NCBI GenBank assembly: GCA_965240325.2
Contig: OZ251236.1
Coordinates: 496,001 to 560,000, forward strand
From: Rebecca billardiae RCC1528
Taxonomy: Eukaryota > Protista > Haptophyta
Reading direction: 5' to 3'
Length of the DNA: 64,000 nucleotides
The notes beneath the pieces are model-generated. The model searched no databases. It was given only the letters and a program-made list of their open reading frames with translations, and was not told where the DNA came from. Positions 2,412-61,800 of this stretch are shown here, piece after piece. How positions within the stretch are numbered: the first letter of the stretch is position 1; every line of letters begins with the position of its first letter. The position numbers and the translations under genes are program-made.

Positions 2412-4055
2412 AACTCTGCCCTGGCGGGCGGGGGGGTCGGCGGGCCGTGCCAGTGCTGTCGCAATATTTCCCCAGCGGGTTCGCGTCTTTTAGCGGATTG
2501 ACGGGCAGGATGACGAATAATAACAATGCGACATACAGATGATGGTGAGCTACCCGACGGCACTGACGAATAATAACGCGACAGATGACTCTGGTGCGAG
2601 CTCACCGACAGTGTGATTGCGCGTGTATTTACGTGCACCCACTGCGCTACTCGTCATCGTGCCGAGCCTTCGACTGCGCGCACGCACTGCCAACTGATTG
2701 CCGTGCGACGGCGGCGTGCTCATGTACGCCTGACGGTGACGGTTTGTTCTTGGAGCTAAACACGAAAACAGTTCAAGTTGTGGCGGAGTGTGATGTCATG
2801 ATTCATTTGTTCAGGTCGTCCGGAAGTTAGTGCATCCTACCGAATTCTGTCTGTCTCTCTGTCTCTCTATGTTGATTTAGCTGAGATCGTGTGTCGCCAG
2901 GATGCCAATGTCCGCACCGGGCACGCGCTCGTCGGCGCTCGCCGCTCCGCGCGCCAGGTCCGGCACTCGCACGTTCGGCGGTATCAGGAGCTCTCGGTGG
3001 TGCGCGCGCGCGCAGTGCGAGAGCGTGTGCCACTCGCGATCGAGGGTGGGCACGAGCTGCTCGAGCAGGCACATGAAGCGCAGCGCATGTGCCACTGGCT
3101 TCACGACGTCGGCCTCGTCCCGCAGCGCCCGTGCCATGGTGGAGGATGGCGCGGCGATCTTGCACGCGCGACGTTGCATCTCTTTGCGAGTGAGCGCCCT
3201 GGAACGGTTGTATCGCGCTGTCGCCTCAGTCGTCGACTCGCGAAGACGCGATTCCTGCCACGGCGGCAGACCCAGCAGGTGCGTGCGGTGCGCCTCGTAC
3301 GCCGCTTTGCGCTGCGCCTCCGTCGCATTGGCCACCGTCGACGCAATGCAGGCCGGACGTGGGTTGAGCGATCTTTGGCCGCGATCGCGAAAGATGATCG
3401 CTACCGGGTCTTGTACGCAAACGGATTTGCATGCGCCCGTTCCTTGAGAAGTTGTGGCACGCGACAGTCCGGTGCGCGGATTCCGGCGATCGAGTTCAGA
3501 AGGCCGCGCCAAATCTTGCGTCGCGTGCGATGGCGCTTCCCGCCCGCGAGACGCCTCGTGATGAGGGCTTTCTCGCACCGAGCCCGACGCGCGACGGTGG
3601 TTCACGCGAGGTGGCTGTCATGCGCAGCGCTTGCTACTATGGCCGGTGCGAGCGCTCGACGTGCAAGTCAGGCGAGGACCGCCCCAGGTCGCACGATCGT
3701 GTCGACGCGCCGAGCGTACCGCTCCAAACGCGTCGATTTCGCCCCCGTTCGACCTGCACGCGAGACGACGAGGGCAGCAATCGCAAATCGGGCGAAAACC
3801 CCCCTCGGGAGTCCTCTCACGATGTCCGCGCCGGCGTTGGATTTGGCGCGCGCCGCCCATGCGCTCCGCGCCATGACGCAACTCTTTTTCGGCCGAGCGT
3901 CCCCAGTGGGAGCTGCGAGGGCGCCCGGTAGTGAGCGAAGCGACCCGGCAGTGAGCGAGGCGATTTTCTTTTCTTTGCGAGGCGATTTTCTTTTTTCTTT
4001 TTCTTTTTCTTATCTTTTTCCCGGGCACTACAAGGGGCGGACCTACGGCCCGCCA
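2412..4055 (-). mobile_element. Helitron2/Helentron-like non-autonomous element, copy 1 (carries ~290 bp unrelated sequence at ~2585-2878)
   Basis: Reverse-complement homologue of 16081-17607 and 17614-19259 with the same termini (5' TGGCGGGCCGTAGGTCCGCC; 3' ACGGCCCGCC...GCCCGCCAGGGCAGAGTT). Flanked by TA runs. Confidence 0.75.
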
Positions 4056-4466
4056 TTATATTCCGATATTATTATTGTCATACTAGTGTCTGCGTCAGCG
4101 CACGTGGACCCGTTAAAGTATTAAGCCGTGAGTCCCTCAACTGAATACAGCTGCTATTGTGTGCTGACGATATATTAGACGACGATATGATGATATAGAT
4201 ATATATATATATATATACTGTTGAATAAGTCATCTGCTTATTATTCAACAGACGACGACGAGTGACTAGCAGCTGACGAGGTTTATTGTCACTCTGACCC
4301 CGCTGCCGTGGCGAACCCGGGCCCGGTCTCCGCGGACAGAGGCATCGATCATGATCAGGCAGCGCGCGCATTCTATAGGTCGCCGGATGCGATCAATCAG
4401 TAGCATATATAGCACTCGCGGTGCCTGAGCTCCCGACATGGCCCTCGGTGCCTGTTCGCACAGCCG

Positions 4467-4543
4467 AGCAACGGCGCTTGGTTCATCGAGCGACAGCCAT
4501 CCACAGCGGTGGTGTGGGCTGCCACTGTCACGGGGCCGCTGCC
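4467..4543 (-). promoter_or_regulatory. SECIS element in the 3' UTR of the DsbA-like selenoprotein
   Basis: On the minus strand: helix I GGCAGCGGC/GCCGUUGCU; core GUGAC...CGAU (non-Watson-Crick quartet); 10-bp helix II AGUGGCAGCC/GGCUGUCGCU; apical mini-stem CCAC-CGCU-GUGG. Lies ~90 nt after the stop codon. Confidence 0.8.
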
Positions 4544-4635
4544 TGGCGCGAAGGGCACGCTGCGTGGTCGCCGCGGGGCGGCTCGTGCTGGCGTGTGCTC
4601 GTGGCCTCTCGGTGCGGATCAGCTGGACGCGGGCG

Positions 4636-5295
4636 CTACGTGCTGCCCGCGGCCTCCTCCAGGATCTCCGCCCACGCATCCGGCGGCTGCGCGCCGGAGA
4701 AGACAGACTTGCCGCCTTCGACGATGAAGTGCGGCACGCCGCGCACGCCGCGGCCAAACTTGCGCATCTGCTCGGTCGTCTCCTCGGCGCACGCGTCCTT
4801 GTTGTCGATCACACTCTGAGCGTCTGGCACGCCGGCGCGCTCCGCGGCGGCGAGGAGGGCCTCGCGAGACGCAGGGTTCTTCTCGCGCGTGAAGTAGTCG
4901 ATCATCAGCTCGTCCGAAAGCTTGCACTGCAGCTCGGAGCCGCCCACCTTCTCGGCGTGTGTGAGCAGCCGGTGGCCGTCCCACGTGTTGCCTGTGTCGC
5001 CCTCGAAGGAGAGCTCGCAGCCAACCTCGCGGAAGCGCTGGCGGATCGGGTTGGTGTCCGACATGATCTGCGCGGCGCGATCGGGGCCAAACTTTTGGCG
5101 GTAGTACTCGCGCTTGTTGATCTCAGGCGGCGTGCTCGGGTTGAGCTGGTAGGGCCTGAATGTCAACTGCACGCGCACGCCCGACTCCTCAGCAGCGCGC
5201 TCAAGGTAGCGCTTGCCGAGGAAGCACCAGGGTCAGACGATGTCGGAGACGACGTCGACCTTGACCACACGCGCAGACGCGAGCGTCGAAGCCAT
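4636..5295 (-). CDS. DsbA/FrnE-family thioredoxin-fold selenoprotein (219 aa; Sec at codon 21, UGA at 5233-5235)
   Basis: MASTLASARVVKVDVVSDIV-TGA-PWCFLGKRYLERA continues in frame into ORF 4636..5178 (PYQLNP...GNTWDGHRL...GVRGVPHF...FSGAQP). The FrnE CPWC motif has its first Cys codon replaced by TGA. Downstream SECIS present. Confidence 0.92.
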
Positions 5296-5639
5296 CACGG
5301 CGAAAGTGCGCTGGCGGATGGTGTCGAGGGGAGAGGGGTGCTGCGACGACCGGCGCCCGCTCACCGCCCGACCGCCGATCCAGCGTCGTCGTCGTCGGCA
5401 GGACCGGACGAAAACGAAAATCTGCGCGCCTCGGCTGACGGCTGAGCAATCTCGAAATCTTCTGGTCATCATGCGCCCATTTATTGGATGCTCCACCGTC
5501 CTCCTCTGATGCTCACCAGTGACGACCAGTTCCCGCTATATATACTTAGTACTTGCCCGCCCGGGCTGAAGGGGTCCCTTGCGCGCTCTGATGACACCAC
5601 ACCGACAGGTCGAGGTGCACTTAATTTGCGCGCGCCGGC

Positions 5640-6650
5640 TTAAGTTGCTGCGGGAGTGGCGGTGCCGGCACCGGGCGGCCCCGCCGGCCCGTCCAAGGCG
5701 AAGGCGCCGCCGGTGACGCGCTGGATGCCACCATCATTTGCCAGCCGCTCGTTGCAGAACGGGCAGCGACGCGTGGCTGACGCGAGCAGGTGCGCGTGGC
5801 ACAGCTCACATACCTGATGCCGATCCTCGGTGGGCCGGTCTGCATGGAGGAGCACGATCGTCCGCGGCCGCTCGAAGCAGATGGCGCACAGATCGTCCTC
5901 AGCCTCTGCGATGCCGTGCTCGACAGCTGCCTGTAGCGCGCTCAGCGTGGCGCGCATGCGCTCGAGGACCTCGCGCTGTACGCGCTTGCGGTCCGGCGGG
6001 CATGCGCCACACCGGCGCCCGATATGCATCCGTGCACCAACCTTTCGTGCCTGGATGGCGCACCACTTGGTGACGCGACGCTTTGCCTGCGCTGTGCTGT
6101 TCGCCGCACTGCCCTCGACGCGTGCCAATCGGAGGCTGCCATGCTCGAGCCAGCCGAGCTCGCTCGATCGGGCGCACAACAGCCTGCGCACGTCGGTCTC
6201 CGAGTAGCCAACCTCGGCAAGCTGCTCCACGGCTGAGTGACACTGTTGAAGCAGCGTCTCGCCGAGCGCGATGACGTGGCGGTTGGCGAGCTTGTACTGG
6301 CGAGTGATCGCATCGCACAACACTTGACGTCCGTCGTCAAGCTCCAGGCCGGCTGCGTGCTGCACGAGGACGAGTGAGGCGGCAAGCTCGTCGATGAGCT
6401 CAGATGACGGCGTCTTCTGCCGCACCAGGCTGAGCTCGGGCTGCACCGGCCGAGCGGACGGCGCAGCGACCGGTTCAGCTGCGCGCGTCGACGTCGACAC
6501 CGCTTCGCGCGTCGATGATGCCCGGGGCGGCGGTTGGTCGGGTCTAACAGGTACGTGCGACGACCCAAACCAGCTCAAGAGCGTCGAGACGAGGCCAAAC
6601 GCGCGGACTAGGAGCGTCAGGGCCACCGTGCAGCCCAATGCCAGCCACAT
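5640..6650 (-). CDS. Membrane-anchored RING-HC-like zinc-finger protein (putative E3 ligase)
   Basis: N-terminal hydrophobic segment (MWLALGCTVALTLLVRAFGLV) and C-terminal CAICFERPRTIVLLH...HQVCELC...RCPFC. Start codon uncertain. Confidence 0.75.
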   Translation of the reverse strand: MWLALGCTVALTLLVRAFGLVSTLLSWFGSSHVPVRPDQPPPRASSTREAVSTSTRAAEPVAAPSARPVQPELSLVRQKTPSSELIDELAASLVLVQHAAGLELDDGRQVLCDAITRQYKLANRHVIALGETLLQQCHSAVEQLAEVGYSETDVRRLLCARSSELGWLEHGSLRLARVEGSAANSTAQAKRRVTKWCAIQARKVGARMHIGRRCGACPPDRKRVQREVLERMRATLSALQAAVEHGIAEAEDDLCAICFERPRTIVLLHADRPTEDRHQVCELCHAHLLASATRRCPFCNERLANDGGIQRVTGGAFALDGPAGPPGAGTATPAAT

Positions 6651-7111
6651 CGTCGCGCCGCCGTCCACCTCGCCGCCAGGCTACCGAATGATGAGCAGCG
6701 GTTGCGGCACCACTCCAGAGCTGACTGCATTTTCATCATGGCTGCACAGCGTCAATGCCCCAGATCTAGAACGGGAGGACTGATCAACATCCGTCCGCTA
6801 ACTCGGAGCCCTTCTACCGCAACAAAGCCGTGCCTTCCCGTTCTACCCACCGCCGACTTGAGGTAGGTATCTACTGCAGTCGCGCTTTTGAGATTGAGCT
6901 GCGCTCAGCCGGCCACTCTTGATCAACTCTGGTGGACAGCTCGGGCCAGTGGCAGGGGAGGCGCCCCACACCATCAAGGCTGCGCCCGCTTGCTCCGAGC
7001 CCTGACGCGCGGGCTCGACACGGGCAGTGGGCACTTGCACGCGGCTGGGTCGGCTGTGCGCACCCGGCTGGACGTCTTCAGCCCCGCCCCTGAGCGGTGC
7101 TCACCCCGAAT

Positions 7112-46800: not shown

Positions 46801-49800
46801 TTGGTGGCAGGCTCGGCGGTGGCGACGGTGGTGGTGACGGTGGTGGTGGCGCTGGTGGCGGCGACGGCGGCGGGCTCTGCGGCGGGCTCGGCGGTGGCGA
46901 CGGTGGCATGGGGCTCGGCGGCGGGCTCCGCGGTGGCGAAGGCGGCGGCGAGGGCGGTGACGAAGGTGGCGGAGGCGAGGGCGGTGGGCTCGGAGGCGGC
47001 AGGCTCGGCGGCGGGCTCGGTGGCGGCGGGCTCGGAGGTGGCGACGGCGGCGGCGGCGATGGCGGAGGCGACGGCGGTGGTGATGACGGTGGCGGTGACG
47101 GTGGTGGATTTGGTGGCAGGCTCGGCGGTGGCGACGGTGGTGGTGACGGTGGTGGTGGCGCTGGTGGCGGCGACGGCGGCGGTGACGGCGGTGGGCTCGG
47201 TGGCGATGACGGCGGAGGCGGCGGGCTCGGCGGCGGGCTCGGCGGCGGGCTCGGCGGGGGGCTCGGCGGTGGCGACGGTGGCTTGGGGCTCGGCGGCGGG
47301 CTCGGCGGTGGCGAAGGCGGCGGCGAGGGCGGTGACGAAGGTGGCGGCGGCGACGGCGGTGGGCTCGGAGGCGGCAGGCTCGGCGGCGGGCTCGGTGGCG
47401 GCGGGCTCGGAGGTGGCGACGACGGCGGCGGCGATGGCGGAGGCGACGGCGGTGGTGATGACGGTGGCGGTGACGGTGGTGGATTTGGTGGCAGGCTCGG
47501 CGGTGGCGACGGTGGTGGTGACGGTGGTGGTGGCGCTGGTGGCGGCGACGGCGGCGGTGACGGCGGCGGGCTCGGTGGTGGCGGTGACGGCGGAGGCGGT
47601 GGGCTCGGCGGGGGGCTCGGCGGCGGGCTCGGCGGGGGGCTCGGCGGTGGCGACGGTGGCTTTGGGCTCGGCGGCGGGCTCGGCGGTGGCGAAGGCGGCA
47701 GCGGCGAGGGCGGTGGGCTCGGAGGCGGCAGGCTCGGCGGCGGGCTCGGTGGCGGCGGGCGCGGAGGTGGCGACGGCGGCGGCGGCGATGGCGGAGGCGA
47801 CGGCGGTGGTGGTGACGGTGGCGGTGACGGTGGCGGATGCGGCGGCAGGCTCGGCGGTGGCGACGGTGGTGGTGACGGTGGTGGTGGCGCTGGTGGCGGC
47901 GACGGCGGCGGTGACGGCGGCGGGCTCGGTGGCGACGACGGCGGAGGCGGCGGGCTCGGCGGTGGCGAAGGCGGCGGCGAAGGCGGTGGCGAAGGCGGCA
48001 GCGGCGAGGGCGGTGGACTCGGAGGCGGCAGGCTCGGCGGCGGGCTCGGTGGCGGCGGGCTCGGAGGTGGCGACGGCGGCGGCGGCGATGGCGGAGGCGA
48101 CGGCAGTGGTGATGACGGTGGCGGTGACGGTGGTGGATTTGGTGGCAGGCTCGGCGGTGGCGACGGTGGTGGTGACGGTGGTGGTGGCGCTGGTGGCGGC
48201 GACGGCGGCGGTGACGGCGGCGGGCTCGGTGGTGGCGGTGACGGCGGAGGCGGTGGGCTCGGCGGGGGGCTCGGCGGCGGGCTCGGCGGGGGGCTCGGCG
48301 GTTGTGACGGTGGCTTTGGGCTCGGCGGCGGGCTCGGCGGTGGCGAAGGCGGCGGCGAAGGCGGTGGCGAAGGTGGCCGCGGCGAGGGCGGTGGGCTCGG
48401 TGGCGGCGGGCTCGGAGGTGGCGACGGCGGCGGCGGCGATGGCGGAGGCGACGGCGGTGGTGATGACGGTGGCGGTGACGGTGGTGGATTTGGTGGCAGG
48501 CTCGGCGGTGGCGACGGTGGTGGTGACGGTGGTGGTGGCGCTGGTGGCGGCGATGGCGGCGGTGACGGCGGCGGGCTCGGTGGTGGCGGTGACGGCGGAG
48601 GCGGTGGGCTCGGCGGGGGGCTCGGCGGTGGGCTCGGCGGGGGGCTCGGCGGCGGCGACGGTGGCTTTGGGCTCGGCGGCGGGCTCGGCGGTGGCGAAGG
48701 TGGCGGCGAGGGCGGTGGCGAAGGTGGCGGCAGCGAGGGCGGTGGGCTCGGAGGTGGCAGGCTCGGTGGCGGGCTCGGTGGCGGCGGGCGCGGAGGTGGC
48801 GACGGCGGCGGCGGCGATGGCGGAGGCGACGGCGGTGGTGGTGACGGAGGGGGTGAAAGCGATCGCGTGATGGTGAGGTTGCTCACGCGATTGGGCTCGT
48901 TGGGTTGCGTCATGCCGCTCCGGCTGAGCCCGCCTAGGTACACCCTCACATCCGAGAATGCAGCGCGCACGCCGCCGTTCGCGTATGTGTGCTCGCAAGC
49001 TGTCGACGTGCTGTTTGCGCTGTCCGAAAGCTCGACACGAATGGTGGATAGGGAGAGAGTGGCTGTGATGTGAATCGGCATGCCCGGCGCGGGAATGTCA
49101 AAGACGCCGCAGCCGTCGTTGCTTGCGCCGGAGTGGTCCGTTCTCACGTAGAGGCCGTCAGTGAACCCAAAGGCGACGTACAGCACACGGTCGCCATATG
49201 AGCAGCAGCCGCCGCCGGTGACGGTGAGGTGGAGAACGTCGCGCCACCCGCCGTCGTAAACGTTTGCAAGCGGCTCGAGCGACAGGCGAACGGTGAATTC
49301 CTCCGGCACGTCGATCGTGGCGATGTGGTTGTTCAATCCAGGCTGGACGGGCCCCGCGAGCTCGAGCAGCACGCCCGGCGTCAACGGCTGCGCCGGAGGG
49401 TCGACGAGCTCGCACACGTAGCCGTACGTATTCGTGCACGGGTGATTTGTGGCCCACTGCGTGCCGCCGCGAAGGGGCGGGTCAATCAGCCGCACGCAAT
49501 CGCCGACATGAGTGTTACGGTCTGGATACCACTCCGTGTACGCGAGCGCCTCGCCACTCACTGCGAGATAGTCGTCAGTTGAGGTGATGTCGAAGACGCC
49601 TATCCACGGCTGGCTCATCGAGATCAAGTCCAGGTGGTAGTACCAGTACTGGAGCTCGATTGCGCTCAGTGGTACGGCCAGTCTGCCGACCAGGCCAGCT
49701 GCGATGCCCAGCGCGACGCAAGCCTCCTGCGCCTGCGGGTGGCAGTCGTGGGGCATCCGCCATCGGCGGGCGCGCGCACGCGTGGCAGGCGGCGAGGGGG

Positions 49801-52800
49801 GATGCATATGAGCGTGGACACTTCTCGCGTACGAGATTATGACGGGGATGCATGGTGGTGGGGGAGGCGCAAGTCGTCGTGTCCATCTCACAGAAGGGGG
49901 TGCGCACGCGCGCGCACACACCGCAGTCCCTGAAAGTGATGCAGAGAAGCCCATGAAGCACTTCTCGACGGCGCCACCTGTCCACACGACGTTGCCGGCA
50001 GTGCCCGGTGTGCACGCGGTGCCCACGGGCGTGGACGGCGGCGGTGGCGGCGCGCTGGCCGACAGCTCGCAGATGTACGCCGCCAGGATGCTGAGGCATC
50101 CCCCATCACCCCACGTGTCGCCAAACCAGAAGATCCCGTCGAAGTAGGCGCAGTCCTGGTTGCCGCCGGAGTTGTTCGGCTGCCCAGTCCGCCATGGGTA
50201 GAAGCCGGCCAGCTTGGAGTCGCTGCCGCGCACAAACACGTTCTCCGCCTGCGAGTCGCTCGGCGCGACCCACGCGTTAGCCACACCCGTCAAGTTGAGG
50301 TGGTACAGCAAGTACTGCACCTCGCGCTCGCTGCCGGGCAGAAAGAGATGGCCCGACAGCCCGGCTGACGCGTTGCCCAACGCAGCACAGCCTGCAGCCG
50401 CCTGCGCGTGCGTCGCGCTGGTCTTGAAGCCAACGAAGCACTTGTCCACGGCGCCGCCCGTCCACACGGCAGCCCCCATGTCGCCAACGGAGCACGCGCG
50501 GCCCAGCGCAGTCGGCGATGGCGGCGGTGGTGGAGCGACGAGCTCGCACACGTAGCTGGACACCAGCGCGCACACATGATGCGTGTAAATGCCGTCGGAC
50601 GTGCGCATCTGCACGCAGTACGGCGTGCCAGACGCATCTGGATACCCGTTTTGGCGCGGGCCGGCCAGCCAGTTGTGCAGTCCCACTGGCTGACCATCGG
50701 CGCGCGCCCACTCGCCCCACGTAGACACAATGGGAGCTCCTTCCGTCTGGTCCTTCATGCCGATCCATGGGCCGTCGGCTGCCGCCATGCCGAGTGAGCT
50801 CGTGTTGAGCTGCGTGAGCGCGAACGCAATCTCGCCGACGCTCAGCGGCGTCAGAAGTCGTCCGATGTACGCGCCCTCCGTCGCAGTCCCCAGCGACTCG
50901 CACGCAGCTTGCGCCTGCGCGCGCGCGCGGGCGCAGCAGGCAGACGACGAGCGCGCGCGCGGCGCAACACGCCGAGGCGGGGCACGGAGCGCAGGGCGGT
51001 GAGCGCAGCGCAGGCGAGGAGCATTCGCAGGCATGCGTGCGCGCGTACCGCCGCCCACGTGGTCGTCAGATTCGAGGTGAAGCCCATGATGCACTTGTCG
51101 ACCACGCCTGAGGTCCAAATGGCGTTGCCAGCGTCGCCCTGCCAGCACGGCGGCACGAACTGGCCCGCCACTGCTGCGCTTGGCGCCGGGGGCGAGTGTG
51201 GCGGGCTCGGCGGCGGGCTCGGCGGTGGCGAAGGCGGCGGCGAGGGCGGTGGCGACGGTGGCGGCGGCGGGGCCGGTGGGCTCGGAGGTGGCAGGCTCGG
51301 CGGCGGGCTCGGTGGCGGCGGGCGCGGAGGTGGCGACGGCGGACGCGGCGGGCTCGGCGGCGGGCGCGGCGGTGGGCTCGGCGGGGGGCTCGGCGGTGAG
51401 CTCGGCGGGGGGCTCGGCGGAGGGGGTGAAAGCGATCGCGTGATGGTGAGGTTGCTCACGCGATTGGGCTCGTTGGGTTGCGTCATGCCGCTCCGGCTGA
51501 GCCCGCCTAGGTACACCCTCACATCCGAGAATGCAGCGCGCACGCCGCCGTTCGCGTATGTGTGCTCGCAAGCTGTCGACGTGCTGTTTGCGCTGTCCGA
51601 AAGCTCGACACGAATGGTGGATAGGGAGAGAGTGGCTGTGATGTGAATCGGCATGCCCGGCGCGGGAATGTCAAAGACGCCGCAGCCGTCGTCGCTTGCG
51701 CCGGAGTGGTCCGTTCTCACGTAGAGGCCGTCAGTGAACCCAAAGGCGACGTACAGCACACGGTCGCCATATGAGCAGCAGCCGCCGCCGGTGACGGTGA
51801 GGTGGAGAACGTCGCGCCACCCGCCGTCGTAAACGTTTGCAAGCGGCTCGAGCGACAGGCGAACGGTGAATTCCTCCGGCACGTCGATCGTGGCGATGTG
51901 GTTGTTCAATCCAGGCTGGACCGGCCCCGCGAGCTCGAGCAGCACGCCCGGCGTCAACGGCTGCGCCGGAGGGTCGACGAGCTCGCACACGTAGCCGTAC
52001 GTATTCGTGCACGGGTGATTTGTGGCCCACTGCGTGCCGCCGCGACGGGGCGGGTCAATCAGCCGCACGCAATCGCCGACATGAGTGTTACGGTTTGGAT
52101 ACCACTCCGTGTACGCGAGCGCCTCGCCACTCACTGCGAGATAGTCGTCAGTTGAGGTGATGTCGAAGACGCCTATCCACGGCTGGCTCATCGAGATCAA
52201 GTCCAGGTGGTAGTACCAGTACTGGAGCTCGATTGCGCTCAGTGGTACGGCCAGTCTGCCGACCAGGCCAGCTGCGATGCCCAGCGCGACGCAAGCCTCC
52301 TGCGCCTGCGGGTGGCAGTCGTGGGGCATCCGCCATCGGCGGGCGCGCGCACGCGTGGCAGGCGGCGAGGGGGGATGCATATGAGCGTGGACACTTCTCG
52401 CGTACGAGATTATGACGGGGATGCATGGTGGTGGGGGAGGCGCAAGTCGTCGTGTCCATCTCACAGAAGGGGGTGCGCACGCGCGCACACCGCAGTCCCT
52501 GAAAGTGATGCAGAGAAGCCCATGAAGCACTTCTCGACGGCGCCACCTGTCCACACGACGTTGCCGGCGGTGCCCGATGTGCACGCGGCGCCCACGGGCG
52601 TGGACGGCGGCGGTGGCGGCGCGCTGGCCGACAGCTCGCAGATGTACGCCGGCACGATGTTGAGGCATGGCCAATCACCCCACGTGTCGCCATACCAGAA
52701 GATCCCGTCGAAGCTGGCGCAGTCCTGGTTGCCTTGAAGGTTGTTCGGCTGCTCAATCCGCCACGGGTAGAAGCCGGCCAGCTTGGAGTCGCTGCCGCGC

Positions 52801-55800
52801 ACAAACACGTTCTCCGTCTGCGAGTCGCTCGGCGCGACCCACGCGTCAGCCACACCCGTCAAGTTGAGGTGGTACAGCAAGTACTGCACCTCGCGCTCGC
52901 TGCCGGGCAGAAAGAGATGGCCCGACAGCCCGGCTGACTCGTTGCCCAACGCAGCACAGCCTGCAGCCGCCTGCGCGTGCGTCGCGCTGGTCTTGAAGCC
53001 GACGAAGCACTTGTCCACGGCGCCGCCCGTCCACACGGCAGCCCCCATGTCGCCAACGGAGCACGCGCGGCCCAGCGCAGTCGGCGGTGGCGGCGGTGGT
53101 GGAGCGACGAGCTCGCACACGTAGCTGGACACCAGCGCGCACGCATGATGCGTGTAAATGCCGTCGGACGTGCGCATCTGCACGCAGTACGGCGTGCCAG
53201 ACGCATCTGGAAACCCGTTCTGGCGCGGGCCGGCCAGCCAGTTGTGCAGTCCCACTGGCTGACCATCGGCGCGCGCCCACTCGCCAAGCGTAAGCGCCGT
53301 GGGAGCTCCTTCCGTCTGGTCCTTCATGCCGATCCATGGGCCGTCGGCTGCCGCCATGCCGAGTGAGCTCGTGTTGAGCTGCGTGAGCGCGAACGCAATC
53401 TCGCCGACGCTCAGCGGCGTCAGAAGTCGTCCGATGTACGCGCCCTCCGTCGCAGTCCCCAGCGACTCGCACGCAGCTTGCGCCTGCGCGCGCGCGCGGG
53501 CGCAGCAGGCAGACGACGAGCGCGCGCGCGGCGCAACACGCCGAGGCGGGGCACGGAGCGCAGGGCGGTGAGCGCAGCGCAGGCGAGGAGCGTTCGCAGG
53601 CATGCGTGCGCGCGTACCGCCGCCCACGTGGTCGTCAGATTCGAGGTGAAGCCCATGATGCACTTGTCGACCACGCCTGAGGTCCAAATGGCGTTGCCAG
53701 CGTCGCCCTGCCAGCACGGCGGCACGAACTGGCCCGCCACTGCTGCGCTTGGCGCCGGGGGCGAGTGTGGCGGGCTCGGCGGCGGGCTCGGCGGTGGCGA
53801 AGGCGGCGGCGAGGGCGGTGGCGACGGTGGCGGCGGCGGGGCCGGTGGGCTCGGAGGTGGCAGGCTCGGCGGCGGGCTCGGTGGCGGCGGGCGCGGAGGT
53901 GGCGACGGCGGACGCGGCGGGCTCGGCGGCGGGCGCGGCGGTGGGCTCGGCGGGGGGCTCGGCGGTGAGCTCGGCGGGGGGCTCGGCGGAGGGGGTGAAA
54001 GCGATCGCGTGATGGTGAGGTTGCTCACGCGATTGGGCTCGTTGGGTTGCGTCATGCCGCTCCGGCTGAGCCCGCCTAGGTACACCCTCACATCCGAGAA
54101 TGCAGCGCGCACGCCGCCGTTCGCGTATGTGTGCTCGCAAGCTGTCGACGTGCTGTTTGCGCTGTCCGAAAGCTCGACACGAATGGTGGATAGGGAGAGA
54201 GTGGCTGTGATGTGAATCGGCATGCCCGGCGCGGGAATGTCAAAGACGCCGCAGCCGTCGTCGCTTGCGCCGGAGTGGTCCGTTCTCACGTAGAGGCCGT
54301 CAGTGAACCCAAAGGCGACGTACAGCACACGGTCGCCATATGAGCAGCAGCCGCCGCCGGTGACGGTGAGGTGGAGAACGTCGCGCCACCCGCCGTCGTA
54401 AACGTTTGCAAGCGGCTCGAGCGACAGGCGAACGGTGAATTCCTCCGGCACGTCGATCGTGGCGATGTGGTTGTTCAATCCAGGCTGGACCGGCCCCGCG
54501 AGCTCGAGCAGCACGCCCGGCGTCAACGGCTGCGCCGGAGGGTCGACGAGCTCGCACACGTAGCCGTACGTATTCGTGCACGGGTGATTTGTGGCCCACT
54601 GCGTGCCGCCGCGACGGGGCGGGTCAATCAGCCGCACGCAATCGCCGACATGAGTGTTACGGTTTGGATACCACTCCGTGTACGCGAGCGCCTCGCCACT
54701 CACTGCGAGATAGTCGTCAGTTGAGGTGATGTCGAAGACGCCTATCCACGGCTGGCTCATCGAGATCAAGTCCAGGTGGTAGTACCAGTACTGGAGCTCG
54801 ATTGCGCTCAGTGGTACGGCCAGTCTGCCGACCAGGCCAGCTGCGATGCCCAGCGCGACGCAAGCCTCCTGCGCCTGCGGGTGGCAGTCGTGGGGCATCC
54901 GCCATCGGCGGGCGCGCGCACGCGTGGCAGGCGGCGAGGGGGGATGCATATGAGCGTGGACACTTCTCGCGTACGAGATTATGACGGGGATGCATGGTGG
55001 TGGGGGAGGCGCAAGTCGTCGTGTCCATCTCACAGAAGGGGGTGCGCACGCGCGCACACCGCAGTCCCTGAAAGTGATGCAGAGAAGCCCATGAAGCACT
55101 TCTCGACGGCGCCACCTGTCCACACGACGTTGCCGGCGGTGCCCGATGTGCACGCGGCGCCCACGGGCGTGGACGGCGGCGGTGGCGGCGCGCTGGCCGA
55201 CAGCTCGCAGATGTACGCCGGCACGATGTTGAGGCATGGCCAATCACCCCACGTGTCGCCATACCAGAAGATCCCGTCGAAGCTGGCGCAGTCCTGGTTG
55301 CCTTGAAGGTTGTTCGGCTGCTCAATCCGCCACGGGTAGAAGCCGGCCAGCTTGGAGTCGCTGCCGCGCACAAACACGTTCTCCGTCTGCGAGTCGCTCG
55401 GCGCGACCCACGCGTCAGCCACACCCGTCAAGTTGAGGTGGTACAGCAAGTACTGCACCTCGCGCTCGCTGCCGGGCAGAAAGAGATGGCCCGACAGCCC
55501 GGCTGACGCGTTGCCCAACGCAGCACAGCCTGCAGCCGCCTGCGCGTGCGTCGCGCTGGTCTTGAAGCCGACGAAGCACTTGTCCACGGCGCCGCCCGTC
55601 CACACGGCAGCCCCCATGTCGCCAACGGAGCACGCGCGGCCCAGCGCAGTCGGCGGTGGCGGCGGTGGTGGAGCGACGAGCTCGCACACGTAGCTGGACA
55701 CCAGCGCGCACGCATGATGCGTGTAAATGCCGTCGGACGTGCGCATCTGCACGCAGTACGGCGTGCCAGACGCATCTGGAAACCCGTTCTGGCGCGGGCC

Positions 55801-58800
55801 GGCCAGCCAGTTGTGCAGTCCCACTGGCTGACCATCGGCGCGCGCCCACTCGCCAAGCGTAAGCGCCGTGGGAGCTCCTTCCGTCTGGTCCTTCATGCCG
55901 ATCCATGGGCCGTCGGCTGCCGCCATGCCGAGTGAGCTCGTGTTGAGCTGCGTGAGCGCGAACGCAATCTCGCCGACGCTCAGCGGCGTCAGAAGTCGTC
56001 CGATGTACGCGCCCTCCGTCGCAGTCCCCAGCGACTCGCACGCAGCTTGCGCCTGCGCGCGCGCGCGGGCGCAGCAGGCAGACGACGAGCGCGCGCGCGG
56101 CGCAACACGCCGAGGCGGGGCACGGAGCGCAGGGCGGTGAGCGCAGCGCAGGCGAGGAGCGTTCGCAGGCATGCGTGCGCGCGTACCGCCGCCCACGTGG
56201 TCGTCAGATTCGAGGTGAAGCCCATGATGCACTTGTCGACCACGCCTGAGGTCCAAATGGCGTTGCCAGCGTCGCCCTGCCAGCACGGCGGCACGAACTG
56301 GCCCGCCACTGCTGCGCTTGGCGCCGGGGGCGAGTGTGGCGGGCTCGGCGGCGGGCTCGGCGGTGGCGAAGGCGGCGGCGAGGGCGGTGGCGACGGTGGC
56401 GGCGGCGGGGCCGGTGGGCTCGGAGGTGGCAGGCTCGGCGGCGGGCTCGGTGGCGGCGGGCGCGGAGGTGGCGACGGCGGACGCGGCGGGCTCGGCGGCG
56501 GGCGCGGCGGTGGGCTCGGCGGGGGGCTCGGCGGTGAGCTCGGCGGGGGGCTCGGCGGAGGGGGTGAAAGCGATCGCGTGATGGTGAGGTTGCTCACGCG
56601 ATTGGGCTCGTTGGGTTGCGTCATGCCGCTCCGGCTGAGCCCGCCTAGGTACACCCTCACATCCGAGAATGCAGCGCGCACGCCGCCGTTCGCGTATGTG
56701 TGCTCGCAAGCTGTCGACGTGCTGTTTGCGCTGTCCGAAAGCTCGACACGAATGGTGGATAGGGAGAGAGTGGCTGTGATGTGAATCGGCATGCCCGGCG
56801 CGGGAATGTCAAAGACGCCGCAGCCGTCGTCGCTTGCGCCGGAGTGGTCCGTTCTCACGTAGAGGCCGTCAGTGAACCCAAAGGCGACGTACAGCACACG
56901 GTCGCCATATGAGCAGCAGCCGCCGCCGGTGACGGTGAGGTGGAGAACGTCGCGCCACCCGCCGTCGTAAACGTTTGCAAGCGGCTCGAGCGACAGGCGA
57001 ACGGTGAATTCCTCCGGCACGTCGATCGTGGCGATGTGGTTGTTCAATCCAGGCTGGACCGGCCCCGCGAGCTCGAGCAGCACGCCCGGCGTCAACGGCT
57101 GCGCCGGAGGGTCGACGAGCTCGCACACGTAGCCGTACGTATTCGTGCACGGGTGATTTGTGGCCCACTGCGTGCCGCCGCGACGGGGCGGGTCAATCAG
57201 CCGCACGCAATCGCCGACATGAGTGTTACGGTTTGGATACCACTCCGTGTACGCGAGCGCCTCGCCACTCACTGCGAGATAGTCGTCAGTTGAGGTGATG
57301 TCGAAGACGCCTATCCACGGCTGGCTCATCGAGATCAAGTCCAGGTGGTAGTACCAGTACTGGAGCTCGATTGCGCTCAGTGGTACGGCCAGTCTGCCGA
57401 CCAGGCCAGCAGCGATGCCCAGCGCGACGCAAGCCTCCTGCGCCTGCGGGTGGCAGTCGTGGGGCATCCGCCATCGGCGGGCGCGCGCACGCGTGGCAGG
57501 CGGCGAGGGGGGATGCATATGAGCGTGGACACTTCTCGCGTACGAGATGTTGAGGACGCATGGTGGTGGGGGAGGCGCAAGTCGTCGTGTCCATCTCACA
57601 GAAGGGGGTGCGCACGCGCGCACACCGCAGTCCCTGAAAGTGATGCAGAGAAGCCCATGAAGCACTTCTCGACGGCGCCACCTGTCCACACGACGTTGCC
57701 GGCGGTGCCCGATGTGCACGCGGCGCCCACGGGCGTGGACGGCGGCGGTGGCGGCGCGCTGGCCGACAGCTCGCAGATGTACGCCGGCACGATGTTGAGG
57801 CATGGCCAATCACCCCACGTGTCGCCATACCAGAAGATCCCGTCGAAGCTGGCGCAGTCCTGGTTGCCTTGAAGGTTGTTCGGCTGCTCAATCCGCCACG
57901 GGTAGAAGCCGGCCAGCTTGGAGTCGCTGCCGCGCACAAACACGTTCTCCGTCTGCGAGTCGCTCGGCGCGACCCACGCGTCAGCCACACCCGTCAAGTT
58001 GAGGTGGTACAGCAAGTACTGCACCTCGCGCTCGCTGCCGGGCAGAAAGAGATGGCCCGACAGCCCGGCTGACGCGTTGCCCAACGCAGCACAGCCTGCA
58101 GCCGCCTGCGCGTGCGTCGCGCTGGTCTTGAAGCCGACGAAGCACTTGTCCACGGCGCCGCCCGTCCACACGGCAGCCCCCATGTCGCCAACGGAGCACG
58201 CGCGGCCCAGCGCAGTCGGCGGTGGCGGCGGTGGTGGAGCGACGAGCTCGCACACGTAGCTGGACACCAGCGCGCACGCATGATGCGTGTAAATGCCGTC
58301 GGACGTGCGCATCTGCACGCAGTACGGCGTGCCAGACGCATCTGGAAACCCGTTCTGGCGCGGGCCGGCCAGCCAGTTGTGCAGTCCCACTGGCTGACCA
58401 TCGGCGCGCGCCCACTCGCCAAGCGTAAGCGCCGTGGGAGCTCCTTCCGTCTGGTCCTTCATGCCGATCCATGGGCCGTCGGCTGCCGCCATGCCGAGTG
58501 AGCTCGTGTTGAGCTGCGTGAGCGCGAACGCAATCTCGCCGACGCTCAGCGGCGTCAGAAGTCGTCCGATGTACGCGCCCTCCGTCGCAGTCCCCAGCGA
58601 CTCGCACGCAGCTTGCGCCTGCGCGCGCGCGCGGGCGCAGCAGGCAGACGACGAGCGCGCGCGCGGCGCAACACGCCGAGGCGGGGCACGGAGCGCAGGG
58701 CGGTGAGCGCAGCGCAGGCGAGGAGCGTTCGCAGGCATGCGTGCGCGCGTACCGCCGCCCACGTGGTCGTCAGATTCGAGGTGAAGCCCATGATGCACTT

Positions 58801-61800
58801 GTCGACCACGCCTGAGGTCCAAATGGCGTTGCCAGCGTCGCCCTGCCAGCACGGCGGCACGAACTGGCCCGCCACTGCTGCGCTTGGCGCCGGGGGCGAG
58901 TGTGGCGGGCTCGGCGGCGGGCTCGGCGGTGGCGAAGGCGGCGGCGAGGGCGGTGGCGACGGTGGCGGCGGCGGGGCCGGTGGGCTCGGAGGTGGCAGGC
59001 TCGGCGGCGGGCTCGGTGGCGGCGGGCGCGGAGGTGGCGACGGCGGACGCGGCGGGCTCGGCGGCGGGCGCGGCGGTGGGCTCGGCGGGGGGCTCGGCGG
59101 TGAGCTCGGCGGGGGGCTCGGCGGAGGGGGTGAAAGCGATCGCGTGATGGTGAGGTTGCTCACGCGATTGGGCTCGTTGGGTTGCGTCATGCCGCTCCGG
59201 CTGAGCCCGCCTAGGTACACCCTCACATCCGAGAATGCAGCGCGCACGCCGCCGTTCGCGTATGTGTGCTCGCAAGCTGTCGACGTGCTGTTTGCGCTGT
59301 CCGAAAGCTCGACACGAATGGTGGATAGGGAGAGAGTGGCTGTGATGTGAATCGGCATGCCCGGCGCGGGAATGTCAAAGACGCCGCAGCCGTCGTCGCT
59401 TGCGCCGGAGTGGTCCGTTCTCACGTAGAGGCCGTCAGTGAACCCAAAGGCGACGTACAGCACACGGTCGCCATATGAGCAGCAGCCGCCGCCGGTGACG
59501 GTGAGGTGGAGAACGTCGCGCCACCCGCCGTCGTAAACGTTTGCAAGCGGCTCGAGCGACAGGCGAACGGTGAATTCCTCCGGCACGTCGATCGTGGCGA
59601 TGTGGTTGTTCAATCCAGGCTGGACCGGCCCCGCGAGCTCGAGCAGCACGCCCGGCGTCAACGGCTGCGCCGGAGGGTCGACGAGCTCGCACACGTAGCC
59701 GTACGTATTCGTGCACGGGTGATTTGTGGCCCACTGCGTGCCGCCGCGACGGGGCGGGTCAATCAGCCGCACGCAATCGCCGACATGAGTGTTACGGTTT
59801 GGATACCACTCCGTGTACGCGAGCGCCTCGCCACTCACTGCGAGATAGTCGTCAGTTGAGGTGATGTCGAAGACGCCTATCCACGGCTGGCTCATCGAGA
59901 TCAAGTCCAGGTGGTAGTACCAGTACTGGAGCTCGATTGCGCTCAGTGGTACGGCCAGTCTGCCGACCAGGCCAGCAGCGATGCCCAGCGCGACGCAAGC
60001 CTCCTGCGCCTGCGGGTGGCAGTCGTGGGGCATCCGCCATCGGCGGGCGCGCGCACGCGTGGCAGGCGGCGAGGGGGGATGCATATGAGCGTGGACACTT
60101 CTCGCGTACGAGATGTTGAGGACGCATGGTGGTGGGGGAGGCGCAAGTCGTCGTGTCCATCTCACAGAAGGGGGTGCGCACGCGCGCACACCGCAGTCCC
60201 TGAAAGTGATGCAGAGAAGCCCATGAAGCACTTCTCGACGGCGCCACCTGTCCACACGACGTTGCCGGCGGTGCCCGATGTGCACGCGGCGCCCACGGGC
60301 GTGGACGGCGGCGGTGGCGGCGCGCTGGCCGACAGCTCGCAGATGTACGCCGGCACGATGTTGAGGCATGGCCAATCACCCCACGTGTCGCCATACCAGA
60401 AGATCCCGTCGAAGCTGGCGCAGTCCTGGTTGCCTTGAAGGTTGTTCGGCTGCTCAATCCGCCACGGGTAGAAGCCGGCCAGCTTGGAGTCGCTGCCGCG
60501 CACAAACACGTTCTCCGTCTGCGAGTCGCTCGGCGCGACCCACGCGTCAGCCACACCCGTCAAGTTGAGGTGGTACAGCAAGTACTGCACCTCGCGCTCG
60601 CTGCCGGGCAGAAAGAGATGGCCCGACAGCCCGGCTGACGCGTTGCCCAACGCAGCACAGCCTGCAGCCGCCTGCGCGTGCGTCGCGCTGGTCTTGAAGC
60701 CGACGAAGCACTTGTCCACGGCGCCGCCCGTCCACACGGCAGCCCCCATGTCGCCAACGGAGCACGCGCGGCCCAGCGCAGTCGGCGGTGGCGGCGGTGG
60801 TGGAGCGACGAGCTCGCACACGTAGCTGGACACCAGCGCGCACGCATGATGCGTGTAAATGCCGTCGGACGTGCGCATCTGCACGCAGTACGGCGTGCCA
60901 GACGCATCTGGAAACCCGTTCTGGCGCGGGCCGGCCAGCCAGTTGTGCAGTCCCACTGGCTGACCATCGGCGCGCGCCCACTCGCCAAGCGTAAGCGCCG
61001 TGGGAGCTCCTTCCGTCTGGTCCTTCATGCCGATCCATGGGCCGTCGGCTGCCGCCATGCCGAGTGAGCTCGTGTTGAGCTGCGTGAGCGCGAACGCAAT
61101 CTCGCCGACGCTCAGCGGCGTCAGAAGTCGTCCGATGTACGCGCCCTCCGTCGCAGTCCCCAGCGACTCGCACGCAGCTTGCGCCTGCGCGCGCGCGCGG
61201 GCGCAGCAGGCAGACGACGAGCGCGCGCGCGGCGCAACACGCCGAGGCGGGGCACGGAGCGCAGGGCGGTGAGCGCAGCGCAGGCGAGGAGCGTTCGCAG
61301 GCATGCGTGCGCGCGTACCGCCGCCCACGTGGTCGTCAGATTCGAGGTGAAGCCCATGATGCACTTGTCGACCACGCCTGAGGTCCAAATGGCGTTGCCA
61401 GCGTCGCCCTGCCAGCACGGCGGCACGAACTGGCCCGCCACTGCTGCGCTTGGCGCCGGGGGCGAGTGTGGCGGGCTCGGCGGCGGGCTCGGCGGTGGCG
61501 AAGGCGGCGGCGAGGGCGGTGGCGACGGTGGCGGCGGCGGGGCCGGTGGGCTCGGAGGTGGCAGGCTCGGCGGCGGGCTCGGTGGCGGCGGGCGCGGAGG
61601 TGGCGACGGCGGACGCGGCGGGCTCGGCGGCGGGCGCGGCGGTGGGCTCGGCGGGGGGCTCGGCGGTGAGCTCGGCGGGGGGCTCGGCGGAGGGGGTGAA
61701 AGCGATCGCGTGATGGTGAGGTTGCTCACGCGATTGGGCTCGTTGGGTTGCGTCATGCCGCTCCGGCTGAGCCCGCCTAGGTACACCCTCACATCCGAGA

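What the first reader, a model, noticed from the sequence alone, without database searches (positions are those of the whole stretch)
4467..5295. Hidden selenoprotein: DsbA/FrnE with a UxxC motif and a non-canonical SECIS
Seen: ORFs 5233..5496 and 4636..5178 are one frame, interrupted by TGA exactly at the first Cys of the CPWC redox motif (SDIV-U-PWC). The 3' UTR folds into a two-helix SECIS with GUGA instead of AUGA, and its apical region (CACA + CCAC/GUGG mini-stem) lacks the usual AA. Known: Sec-containing DsbA-like proteins occur in marine algae and bacteria; GUGA and non-AA SECIS variants are known but uncommon. Automated annotation would truncate this gene, and standard SECIS models may miss the element.
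Basis: partly seen in the sequence, partly recalled or inferred. Interest (0 to 1): 0.75.

Follow-up and report, generated by a model that had tools for sequence, protein, structure and literature searches.

The report
Selenocysteine DsbA/FrnE gene in an alga
This is a real but ordinary algal gene for a small redox enzyme (DsbA/FrnE type) whose mid-gene TGA "stop" is almost certainly read as selenocysteine, helped by an RNA hairpin just after the gene. Gene finders cut the gene short, but the selenium form of this family and this style of hairpin are already known in algae.

Summary
Observation confirmed; interpretation supported; the novelty is low.

- **The gene.** It is a single exon on the minus strand, 5295..4636. 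It encodes a 219-residue FrnE-type DsbA oxidoreductase with TGA (5235..5233) at the first Cys of the CxxC motif (SDIV-U-PWC).
- **Comparative evidence.** Five other orthologues carry TGA at the same codon, with conserved, synonymously varying flanks: four metagenome or run-assembly sequences and Pavlovales sp. CCMP2436. More distant homologues (Gonium, bacteria, D. radiodurans FrnE) have Cys there.
- **The hairpin.** A two-helix, type-2 SECIS-like hairpin (4547..4463) lies 105 nt after the TAG stop. It has a GUGA/GA core, a 10-bp helix 2, a CACA bulge and a CCAC/GUGG mini-stem.
- **Specificity.** It is the only hit of a SECIS descriptor in both strands of the window. It is also the top hit of a model built from nine other SECIS of this genome (E about 0.08).
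- **Lineage habits.** GUGA cores (4 of 9) and apices without AA (2 of 9) recur in this genome's GPx, Rdx and Sep15/SelM genes.
- **Machinery.** The genome has tRNA-Sec, SepSecS, SPS and eEFSec. SBP2 was not tested.
- **Limits.** No sequencing run was listed, so expression was not checked.
- **Prior knowledge.** Sec-DsbA/FrnE and GUGA SECIS in algae are published. Other agents of this scan noted similar SECIS elsewhere in this genome.

The parts
5236..5295 (-). First 20 codons (MASTLASARVVKVDVVSDIV), from the likely start ATG 5295..5293 to the codon before the TGA
   Evidence: GC3 of these 20 codons is 0.85, like the whole CDS (0.886). The in-frame stretch upstream of the ATG has GC3 0.70, nearer the 0.59-0.68 of the 3' UTR frames. 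V-x-[IV]-[DE]-[AV]-V-S-D-[IV]-V is conserved in the orthologues.
5233..5235 (-). In-frame TGA, read as selenocysteine (residue 21) in the U-P-W-C redox motif
   Evidence: TGA is invariant in six distinct orthologues while neighbouring codons vary synonymously. It aligns with Cys in Gonium and bacterial homologues and falls one residue before the aligned PWC (residues 23-25) of FrnE 5cnw.
4636..5232 (-). Remaining 198 codons of the DsbA/FrnE domain plus the TAG stop (4638..4636)
   Evidence: Pfam PF01323 E 1.1e-19. Nearest solved structure is FrnE 5cnw, E 1e-09, including the GVP (cis-Pro) and SGAQ stretches. Orthologues are 54-80% identical.
4463..4547 (-). Type-2 SECIS element in the 3' UTR: helix 1 4547-4535/4475-4463; core G4531 UGA 4530-4528 C4527 with C4488 GA 4487-4486 U4485; helix 2 4526-4517/4498-4489; bulge CACA 4516-4513; mini-stem 4512-4509/4504-4501
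   Evidence: Only descriptor hit in the window. Top hit (17.4 bits, E 0.078) of model R1, which was built from nine other SECIS of this genome. Same architecture as those nine.
5640..6668 (-). Upstream neighbour: RING-finger (C3HC4) protein gene. Not part of the system; it marks the 5' limit of the DsbA gene region
   Evidence: Pfam zf-C3HC4_3, E 3.2e-06. The same neighbour is on the Logan contig L041.

Best explanation
An intron-less nuclear gene of a very GC-rich marine microalga (haptophyte or pelagophyte type) encodes a 219-residue FrnE-type DsbA-like thiol-disulfide oxidoreductase. The nucleophilic first cysteine of its CxxC motif is selenocysteine (U21-P-W-C24).

During translation, the UGA at 5235..5233 is decoded by Sec-tRNA(Sec). 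The tRNA is delivered by eEFSec, recruited through a type-2 SECIS hairpin in the 3' UTR (4547..4463). That hairpin lies about 700 nt downstream of the UGA and 105 nt after the true UAG stop.

The protein has no evident leader, so it probably acts in the cytosol. There it would be a selenenylsulfide/selenolate-thiol redox catalyst (disulfide reductase or isomerase, for oxidative-stress defence), like Cys-FrnE but more reactive.

- **Shown here:** gene structure, conservation of the TGA, Cys/Sec homologue pairs, hairpin anatomy, and presence of the machinery genes.
- **Inferred:** actual Sec insertion, cellular location and substrate.
For: 1. The TGA lies in frame inside a complete DSBA domain.
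2. The same codon is TGA in L005, L006, L042, L045 and L010 (Pavlovales sp. CCMP2436). Their flanks are conserved (SD[IV]V-U-P[WFY]C-xLGKRY), while Ser, Val and Pro codons vary synonymously.
3. Homologues at 41% identity or less carry Cys there: Gonium P0011; bacteria P0014, P0018, P0021. PWC aligns to FrnE residues 23-25.
4. A Logan run assembly (L041, ERR14847148) shows the identical TGA and hairpin.
5. The SECIS has a U.U/G.A/A.G core, a 10-bp helix 2, a mini-stem and a 12-pair helix 1. It is the only descriptor hit in 128 kb and rank 1 with the lineage model R1, which was built without it.
6. Four orthologues have SECIS candidates 34-83 nt after their stops. Their helix-2 sequences differ but still pair: 39 of 40 cells across the five elements, window included. 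This count is partly circular, because the scan that found them required pairing.
7. Nine other selenoprotein genes of this genome (3 GPx, 2 Rdx, 4 Sep15/SelM) have the same SECIS design. Four have GUGA cores and two lack AA in the apex (ACA, CAGA).
8. Machinery genes are present:
   - tRNA-Sec: 72 bits, anticodon tca.
   - SepSecS: 357 bits.
   - SPS/SelD: matched in exons.
   - eEFSec: SelB-type GTPase at 147 bits, with euk_SelB_III at 72.8 bits next to it on C23.
Against: - There is no expression, read-level or protein evidence: no sequencing run was listed.
- Rfam SECIS models give no hit, even at E<=10.
- The lineage model's E-value over the whole window is only 0.078.
- The hairpin's folding energy is not exceptional for this GC content (z -1.68).
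- The apex lacks the AA motif that animal SECIS need.
- SBP2 was not looked for.
- The Pavlovales copy (L010) has a frame break downstream and no clean 3' GA partner in its hairpin. That copy may be decaying or misassembled.
Confidence: 0.9

Rival explanations
1. The TGA is a true stop. The gene is a recent nonsense pseudogene, or the cell makes only a truncated DsbA domain from a downstream start (as in database protein P0001), lacking the redox motif.
For: Gene callers produce exactly this 180-aa product, P0001, which starts at the codon listed as GTG. No expression data are available.
Against: Six distinct lineages keep the TGA at this codon, and the 8-10 codons upstream are conserved at the protein level with synonymous variation. 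A nonsense allele would not be shared, and an untranslated leader would not be conserved this way. A truncated product would lack the whole active site. A SECIS sits in the UTR of the window gene and of four orthologues.
Confidence: 0.03
2. The TGA is a sequencing or assembly error for TGC/TGT, and the protein is an ordinary Cys-DsbA.
For: Single-base errors occur, and I could not lay reads on the site.
Against: A separately assembled Logan contig has the same TGA (L041), though it may come from the same isolate. So do five orthologues from unrelated samples. A SECIS would have no purpose downstream of a Cys gene.
Confidence: 0.02
3. The UGA is read through without selenium: near-cognate Trp, Cys or Arg insertion, or programmed readthrough. 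The hairpin would be an unrelated UTR structure.
For: UGA followed by C is a leaky context. The hairpin lacks the AA motif and fails the Rfam models.
Against: The site is the catalytic Cys position of a thioredoxin-fold CxxC, the classic place for Sec. The genome has the full Sec pathway and at least nine other UGA-at-Sec-site genes with the same hairpin design. The hairpin has the exact kink-turn core at the right spacing.
Confidence: 0.04

Closest known systems
Sec-containing DsbA / FrnE selenoproteins of algae, ascidians, amphioxus and marine bacteria (PMC2874816; PMC7539508; PMC6627142)
   Same: Same Pfam family (PF01323). Sec replaces the first Cys of the CxxC motif. A type-2 SECIS lies in the 3' UTR of the eukaryotic members. 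The gene is routinely mis-annotated by truncation at the TGA. DSBA is listed among the most widely distributed algal Sec proteins.
   Different: This copy comes from a GC-rich haptophyte/pelagophyte-type alga, not from the Mamiellophyceae, Ciona or bacteria named in those papers. I did not place it on a tree with the published sequences, so orthology to them is untested.
Deinococcus radiodurans FrnE (PDB 5cnw), a cytoplasmic Cys-type disulfide isomerase/reductase
   Same: Nearest solved structure by sequence (E 1e-09 over 188 residues). The P-W-C after the active-site position, the GVP cis-Pro loop and the SGAQ stretch all align.
   Different: FrnE has Cys where this gene has UGA. It is 260 residues long and extends about 40-50 residues beyond the aligned region (ends at chain residue 212); this protein stops right after the domain.
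GUGA-type SECIS elements of green algae and sponges (PMC3473315; PMC11227280)
   Same: G instead of A before the UGA of the kink-turn core, with the GA partner intact. In this genome, 4 of 9 other SECIS also have GUGA.
   Different: The published pattern is GUGA_AA. Here the apical bulge reads CACA with no AA, as in two other SECIS of this genome (ACA in L031, CAGA in L029).
CC-type SECIS of vertebrate SelM/SelO (as cited in PMC2874816, PMC2375036, PMC3753652)
   Same: The apical adenines are replaced, yet the element is taken as functional. If the last helix-2 pair (C4517-G4498) opens, the bulge starts with CC at the distance allowed by the NTGA__CC__GA search pattern (PMC2375036).
   Different: In the predicted fold only one of those C residues is unpaired, and the bulge is C-A-C-A. 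Function is untested.

Membership tests
DsbA-like thioredoxin domain, FrnE subtype (Pfam PF01323) | Full-length match to the DSBA profile above the curated cut-off | tested here: met
   71.4 bits against a cut-off of 25.6 for the post-TGA piece. 81.2 bits over profile 2-190 when read across the TGA.
DsbA-like thioredoxin domain, FrnE subtype (Pfam PF01323) | CxxC-type redox motif at the start of the first helix | tested here: met
   U-P-W-C, with TGA at the first position. It aligns to C-P-W-C of Gonium and bacterial homologues, and PWC aligns to FrnE residues 23-25.
DsbA-like thioredoxin domain, FrnE subtype (Pfam PF01323) | cis-Pro loop (G-V-P) facing the active site | tested here: met
   RGVPHF aligns with the GVPFF of FrnE 5cnw. 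This is sequence alignment only; no structure was predicted.
Eukaryotic selenoprotein gene | In-frame UGA aligned with Cys in homologues, and conserved as UGA in orthologues with conserved flanks | tested here: met
   Six orthologues with TGA. Cys in P0011, P0014, P0018, P0021 and P0029.
Eukaryotic selenoprotein gene | SECIS element in the 3' UTR on the same strand | tested here: met
   Hairpin 4547..4463, 105 nt after the stop. Unique descriptor hit. Rank 1 with lineage model R1. The Rfam model is not matched.
Eukaryotic selenoprotein gene | Sec machinery in the genome: tRNA-Sec, SepSecS, SPS, eEFSec, SBP2 | tested here: inconclusive
   tRNA-Sec, SepSecS, SPS exons and eEFSec (GTPase plus euk_SelB_III on C23) were found. 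SBP2 was not searched because no specific profile was at hand.
Eukaryotic selenoprotein gene | Selenium actually present in the protein | not testable with these tools
   Needs 75Se labelling or mass spectrometry.
Canonical eukaryotic SECIS (Rfam RF00031; AUGA_AA_GA consensus) | Kink-turn core UGA-N / N-GA with helix 2 of about 9-12 pairs | tested here: met
   U4530.U4485, G4529.A4486, A4528.G4487, C4527.C4488, then 10 pairs.
Canonical eukaryotic SECIS (Rfam RF00031; AUGA_AA_GA consensus) | A before the UGA, and unpaired AA in the apical bulge or loop | tested here: not met
   G4531 precedes the UGA. The apex CACACCACCGCUGUGGAU has no AA.
Canonical eukaryotic SECIS (Rfam RF00031; AUGA_AA_GA consensus) | Score against the Rfam covariance model | tested here: not met
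   No Rfam hit in 4000-5600 at E<=10. Genome-wide, RF00031 gives one weak hit (27 bits) although many selenoprotein genes are present.

The most novel reading that the evidence does not exclude
This alga's Sec machinery routinely accepts SECIS elements with a GUGA core and no apical AA (ACA/CACA/CAGA bulges). The DsbA element is one clean, compact example. That would mean the apical-adenine requirement known from animals is relaxed or replaced in this lineage, and that AA/CC-pattern or Rfam-based selenoprotein surveys under-count its selenoproteome.
Probability: 0.5. Interest if true: 0.4.

Novelty: new member of a known kind. Interest (0 to 1): 0.3.

Why it matters
- **Annotation.** Public protein sets hold only N-terminally truncated, active-site-less versions of this gene and of all its close relatives (P0001-P0010, P0012). 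One of these is the NCBI 'thioredoxin-like protein, partial' of Pavlovales sp. CCMP2436. The correct product has a U-P-W-C redox centre.
- **Method.** Standard SECIS models miss this genome's elements. A lineage-trained model, or a descriptor that allows [AG]UGA and non-AA apices, is needed to count its selenoproteome.
- **Biology.** The finding adds a member to a known selenoprotein family and does not change what is known about Sec decoding.

Tried and rejected
- **Rfam.** The gathering scan of the whole window and the E<=10 scan of 4000-5600 found nothing. RF00031 over the genome gave one weak hit elsewhere.
- **Reads.** The look-up of sequencing runs listed none, so read laying could not be used. 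Expression, the mRNA 3' end and the read-level base at the TGA remain unchecked.
- **First SECIS scanner.** It missed even the window's element because of a trimming rule. I corrected it.
- **eEFSec hunt with the bacterial SelB profile TIGR00475.**
  - I chased four candidates that turned out to be organellar EF-Tu (L046), HBS1-like (L049), LepA/EF4 (L050) and EF-1alpha-like (L051).
  - PF25461 (bacterial beta-barrel) gave nothing.
  - PF21208 (euk_SelB_III) then located the gene on C23, next to the 147-bit GTPase hit.
- **Pavlovales L010 hairpin.** It has AUGA and an 11-bp helix, but I could not find a proper 3' GA partner, and the gene has a frame break. I left it out of the SECIS comparison.
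- **L043/L044 orthologue.** The upstream part is in another frame (intron or frameshift), so it was not used.
- **Folding energy.** It does not distinguish the element in this GC-rich sequence, so I rejected it as evidence.
- **Not run.** I judged structure prediction, complex prediction and the large representative search unnecessary for a clear family member.

Full report
**1. What is in the sequence**

The feature lies on the minus strand.
- An ATG at 5295..5293 opens a frame that reads MASTLASARVVKVDVVSDIV. It then meets TGA at 5235..5233, continues PWCFLGKRYLERAAEE..., and ends at TAG 4638..4636.
- The whole reading is 660 nt, that is 220 codons with the stop, so the product has 219 residues with position 21 at the TGA.
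- GC3 is 0.886 over the CDS and 0.85 over the 20 codons before the TGA. It is 0.70 in the in-frame stretch upstream of the ATG and 0.59-0.68 in the 3' UTR. This supports ATG 5295 as the start and shows that the short pre-TGA stretch has coding character.
- No N-terminal leader is evident.

**2. What protein it is**

- The post-TGA piece matches Pfam DSBA (PF01323) at E 1.1e-19, profile positions 11-190 of 191.
- A six-frame genome search that reads through stops extends the match to profile 2-190 and raises the score to 81 bits, with '1 TGA' inside.
- The nearest solved structure is the FrnE protein of Deinococcus radiodurans (5cnw, E 1e-09). The query's P-W-C aligns to FrnE residues 23-25, so the TGA falls one residue earlier, where a CxxC motif would have its first Cys. 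The alignment starts at residue 23, so it does not show that residue. The GVP loop and the SGAQ stretch also align.
- More distant homologues carry Cys at this position. Examples are Gonium pectorale (SDTV-C-PWC) and several alphaproteobacterial DsbA-family oxidoreductases (SDAV-C-PWC).

**3. Comparative evidence that the TGA is a sense codon**

All close relatives in the protein database (54-80% identity) are N-terminally truncated. They start at an internal Met or at a non-ATG start just after the motif.

I fetched the DNA for five of them. Each has TGA at the same codon and an open, conserved frame upstream:

| Locus | Source | Reading around the TGA |
|---|---|---|
| L005 | JGI metagenome | IDAVSDVV-TGA-PFCLLGKRYIE |
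| L006 | Logan | IDAVSDIV-TGA-PFCLLGKRYIE |
| L042 | Logan | IDAVSDVV-TGA-PFCLLGKRYIE |
| L045 | Logan | IDAVSDVV-TGA-PFCHLGKRYIE |
| L010 | Pavlovales sp. CCMP2436, MU631375.1 | IEAVSDIV-TGA-PYCLLGKRYIE |

- Around the invariant TGA the neighbouring codons vary synonymously: Ser TCC/AGC/TCA, Val GTC/GTA/GTG, Pro CCC/CCA/CCG.
- In the eight codons just upstream, third positions carry 39 of 74 pairwise differences.
- A shared nonsense mutation or an untranslated leader does not explain this pattern.
- A Logan contig from run ERR14847148 (L041) reproduces the window's RING neighbour gene and, over the translated stretch and the hairpin, its sequence exactly, with the same TGA and 3' hairpin. An error private to this assembly is therefore unlikely. 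The run may, however, come from the same isolate.

**4. The SECIS element**

- **Anatomy.** The element starts 105 nt after the TAG stop.
  - Helix 1: 4547-4535 paired with 4475-4463 (12 of 13 pairs).
  - Internal loop, then the core: G4531-U-G-A-C4527 opposite C4488-G-A-U4485. This gives the U.U, G.A, A.G quartet.
  - Helix 2: 4526-4517 paired with 4498-4489 (10 pairs).
  - Apex: bulge C-A-C-A, mini-stem CCAC/GUGG with loop CGCU, then AU on the return strand.
  - Both the MFE and the centroid folds show this shape.
- **Descriptor scan.** A descriptor built from the textbook consensus finds this site and no other on either strand of the 64-kb window. Dinucleotide shuffles give 0.3 hits per window at loose thresholds and 0.03 at this site's scores. 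I wrote the descriptor after seeing the site, so this is supportive, not blind.
- **Lineage model.** As a blind test I built covariance model R1 from nine SECIS candidates of other selenoprotein genes of the same genome, leaving the window out. With filters off, its best hit in the window is 4477-4539 on the minus strand, at 17.4 bits and E 0.078. That is rank 1 of 128 kb but weak on its own. Restricted to a 400-nt UTR on one strand, the same score would correspond to roughly 2e-4 (my scaling).
- **What gave no support.** Thermodynamics alone is not informative in this GC-rich DNA (z -1.68 and +0.70). Rfam's SECIS families give nothing, even at E<=10.

**5. The 'non-canonical' traits are lineage habits**

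- Using Pfam profiles on the genome, I found in-frame TGA at the known Sec sites of three GPx, two Rdx (SelT/W/H-type) and four Sep15/SelM genes.
- Each has a type-2 SECIS candidate downstream with the same plan as the DsbA element.
- Four of the nine have GUGA cores (L019, L020, L024, L028).
- Two lack AA in the bulge: L031 reads ACA and L029 reads CAGA.
- Published work already states that most SECIS of Chlamydomonas and Ostreococcus, and many of a sponge, are GUGA_AA (PMC3473315; also PMC11227280).
- Classic searches allow NTGA with AA or CC (PMC2375036). If the last helix-2 pair opens, the DsbA bulge begins with CC at an allowed distance, so it could also be read as a CC-type element.
- The orthologues' SECIS candidates all have AUGA cores and much longer apical arms. 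They lie 34-83 nt after their stops.
- Across the five elements, the first eight helix-2 positions pair in 39 of 40 cells with many two-sided changes. Those hairpins were selected by a scan that demanded pairing, so this count is partly circular.
- RF00031 finds only one weak hit in the whole genome.

**6. Machinery**

| Component | Evidence |
|---|---|
| tRNA-Sec | G000:C12:287885-287971; 72 bits in Rfam; ARAGORN anticodon tca |
| SepSecS | C22; 357 bits |
| SPS/SelD | Three exon matches on C23 |
| eEFSec | C23: SelB-type GTPase match of 147 bits at 743190-743987, with the eukaryote-specific euk_SelB_III domain (72.8 bits, cut-off 27) just downstream at 742646-742987 |
| SBP2 | Not searched |

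The read and cDNA test could not be run because no run was listed.

**7. How it most likely works**

- **Shown:** a complete FrnE-type DsbA gene with UGA at the catalytic position, a conserved Sec/Cys pair pattern, a SECIS-type hairpin, and a Sec pathway in the genome.
- **Inferred:**
  - eEFSec with Sec-tRNA(Sec), recruited through the SECIS (via an SBP2-like factor), recodes the UGA.
  - The protein uses a selenolate at U21 and a thiol at C24 as a selenenylsulfide couple.
  - With no leader it would act in the cytosol as a disulfide reductase or isomerase in oxidative-stress defence. Papers describe the same role for Cys-FrnE and propose it for Sec-FrnE in prasinophytes (PMC6627142).

**8. 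Comparison with what is known, and novelty**

- Sec-containing DsbA has been reported in marine bacteria, Micromonas, Ciona and amphioxus (PMC2874816).
- Sec-FrnE has been reported in Mamiellophyceae and Mesostigma (PMC6627142).
- DSBA is listed among the most widely distributed algal Sec proteins (PMC7539508).
- This gene is therefore a new member of a known kind.
- The only mildly unusual part is the SECIS apex without AA. This genome shares that trait across several genes, and other agents of this scan have already noted it on other DNA of the same genome (s1-343787, s1-353048).

**9. Seen in passing**

- The genome has a second DsbA-like gene with an in-frame TGA at the same active-site position, but with Gly where the second Cys should be (VSDTM-U-PNG-FIGK). 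It lies on C36 (L027) and has an AUGA SECIS candidate 64 nt after its stop.
- It has 177 homologues, and 11 of the 12 sequences inspected begin at or after an internal Met that lies beyond the motif. Two metagenome contigs show the same '...SDTM*PNGFIGKRHL'.
- I did not establish whether this UxxG family has been described.
- A third paralogue (L026) reads CPWV and has no stop.

Noticed in passing
L027 (G000:C36:580366-583935), minus strand; TGA at L027 2118..2116; post-TGA ORF L027:1405-2115: A second DsbA-like gene of this genome has an in-frame TGA at the CxxC first-Cys position, but the motif is U-P-N-G (Gly instead of the resolving Cys): VELVSDTM-U-PNGFIGKWHL. An AUGA SECIS candidate lies 64 nt after its stop. 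It has 177 homologues, including Haptolina brevifila and Nitzschia inconspicua; 11 of the 12 sequences inspected begin at or after an internal Met beyond the motif. Two metagenome contigs (L052, L054) show the same SDTM*PNGFIGKRHL; the stop codon there was seen only as '*'. I did not check whether this UxxG family is described in the literature.
   Followed up: partly
L026 (G000:C25:1415481-1419047), minus strand: A third DSBA-domain paralogue has a C-P-W-V motif (single Cys, no in-frame stop) and a long N-terminal extension.
   Followed up: no
L010 2263-2908 (Pavlovales sp. CCMP2436, MU631375.1): The orthologue keeps the TGA and its flanks, but it lacks about 18 codons and changes frame after KFGPER. 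Its AUGA hairpin has no clear 3' GA partner. It may be a decaying copy or an assembly or annotation problem. NCBI lists only a 135-aa 'thioredoxin-like protein, partial'.
   Followed up: partly
window about 48800-64000, plus strand: Model hits recur every ~2.57 kb (50885, 53454, 56023, 58589, 61155, 63724). The region has strong positive GC skew and up to 76% GC. This points to a tandem array of ~2.57-kb units running to the end of the window.
   Followed up: no
G000:C23:742646-743987, minus strand (L048, L055): Probable eEFSec gene: a SelB-type GTPase match (147 bits) followed by the eukaryote-specific euk_SelB_III domain (72.8 bits).
   Followed up: partly
L018-L020, L023, L024, L028-L031 (own genome): Nine other selenoprotein genes (3 GPx, 2 Rdx, 4 Sep15/SelM) have TGA at the Sec site and type-2 SECIS candidates. 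Rfam RF00031 detects none of them above threshold, and genome-wide it gives one 27-bit hit.
   Followed up: partly
window 4200-4215 and about 4405-4415: Short (TA)n tracts flank the 3' end of the DsbA gene region in otherwise 65-70% GC DNA.
   Followed up: no
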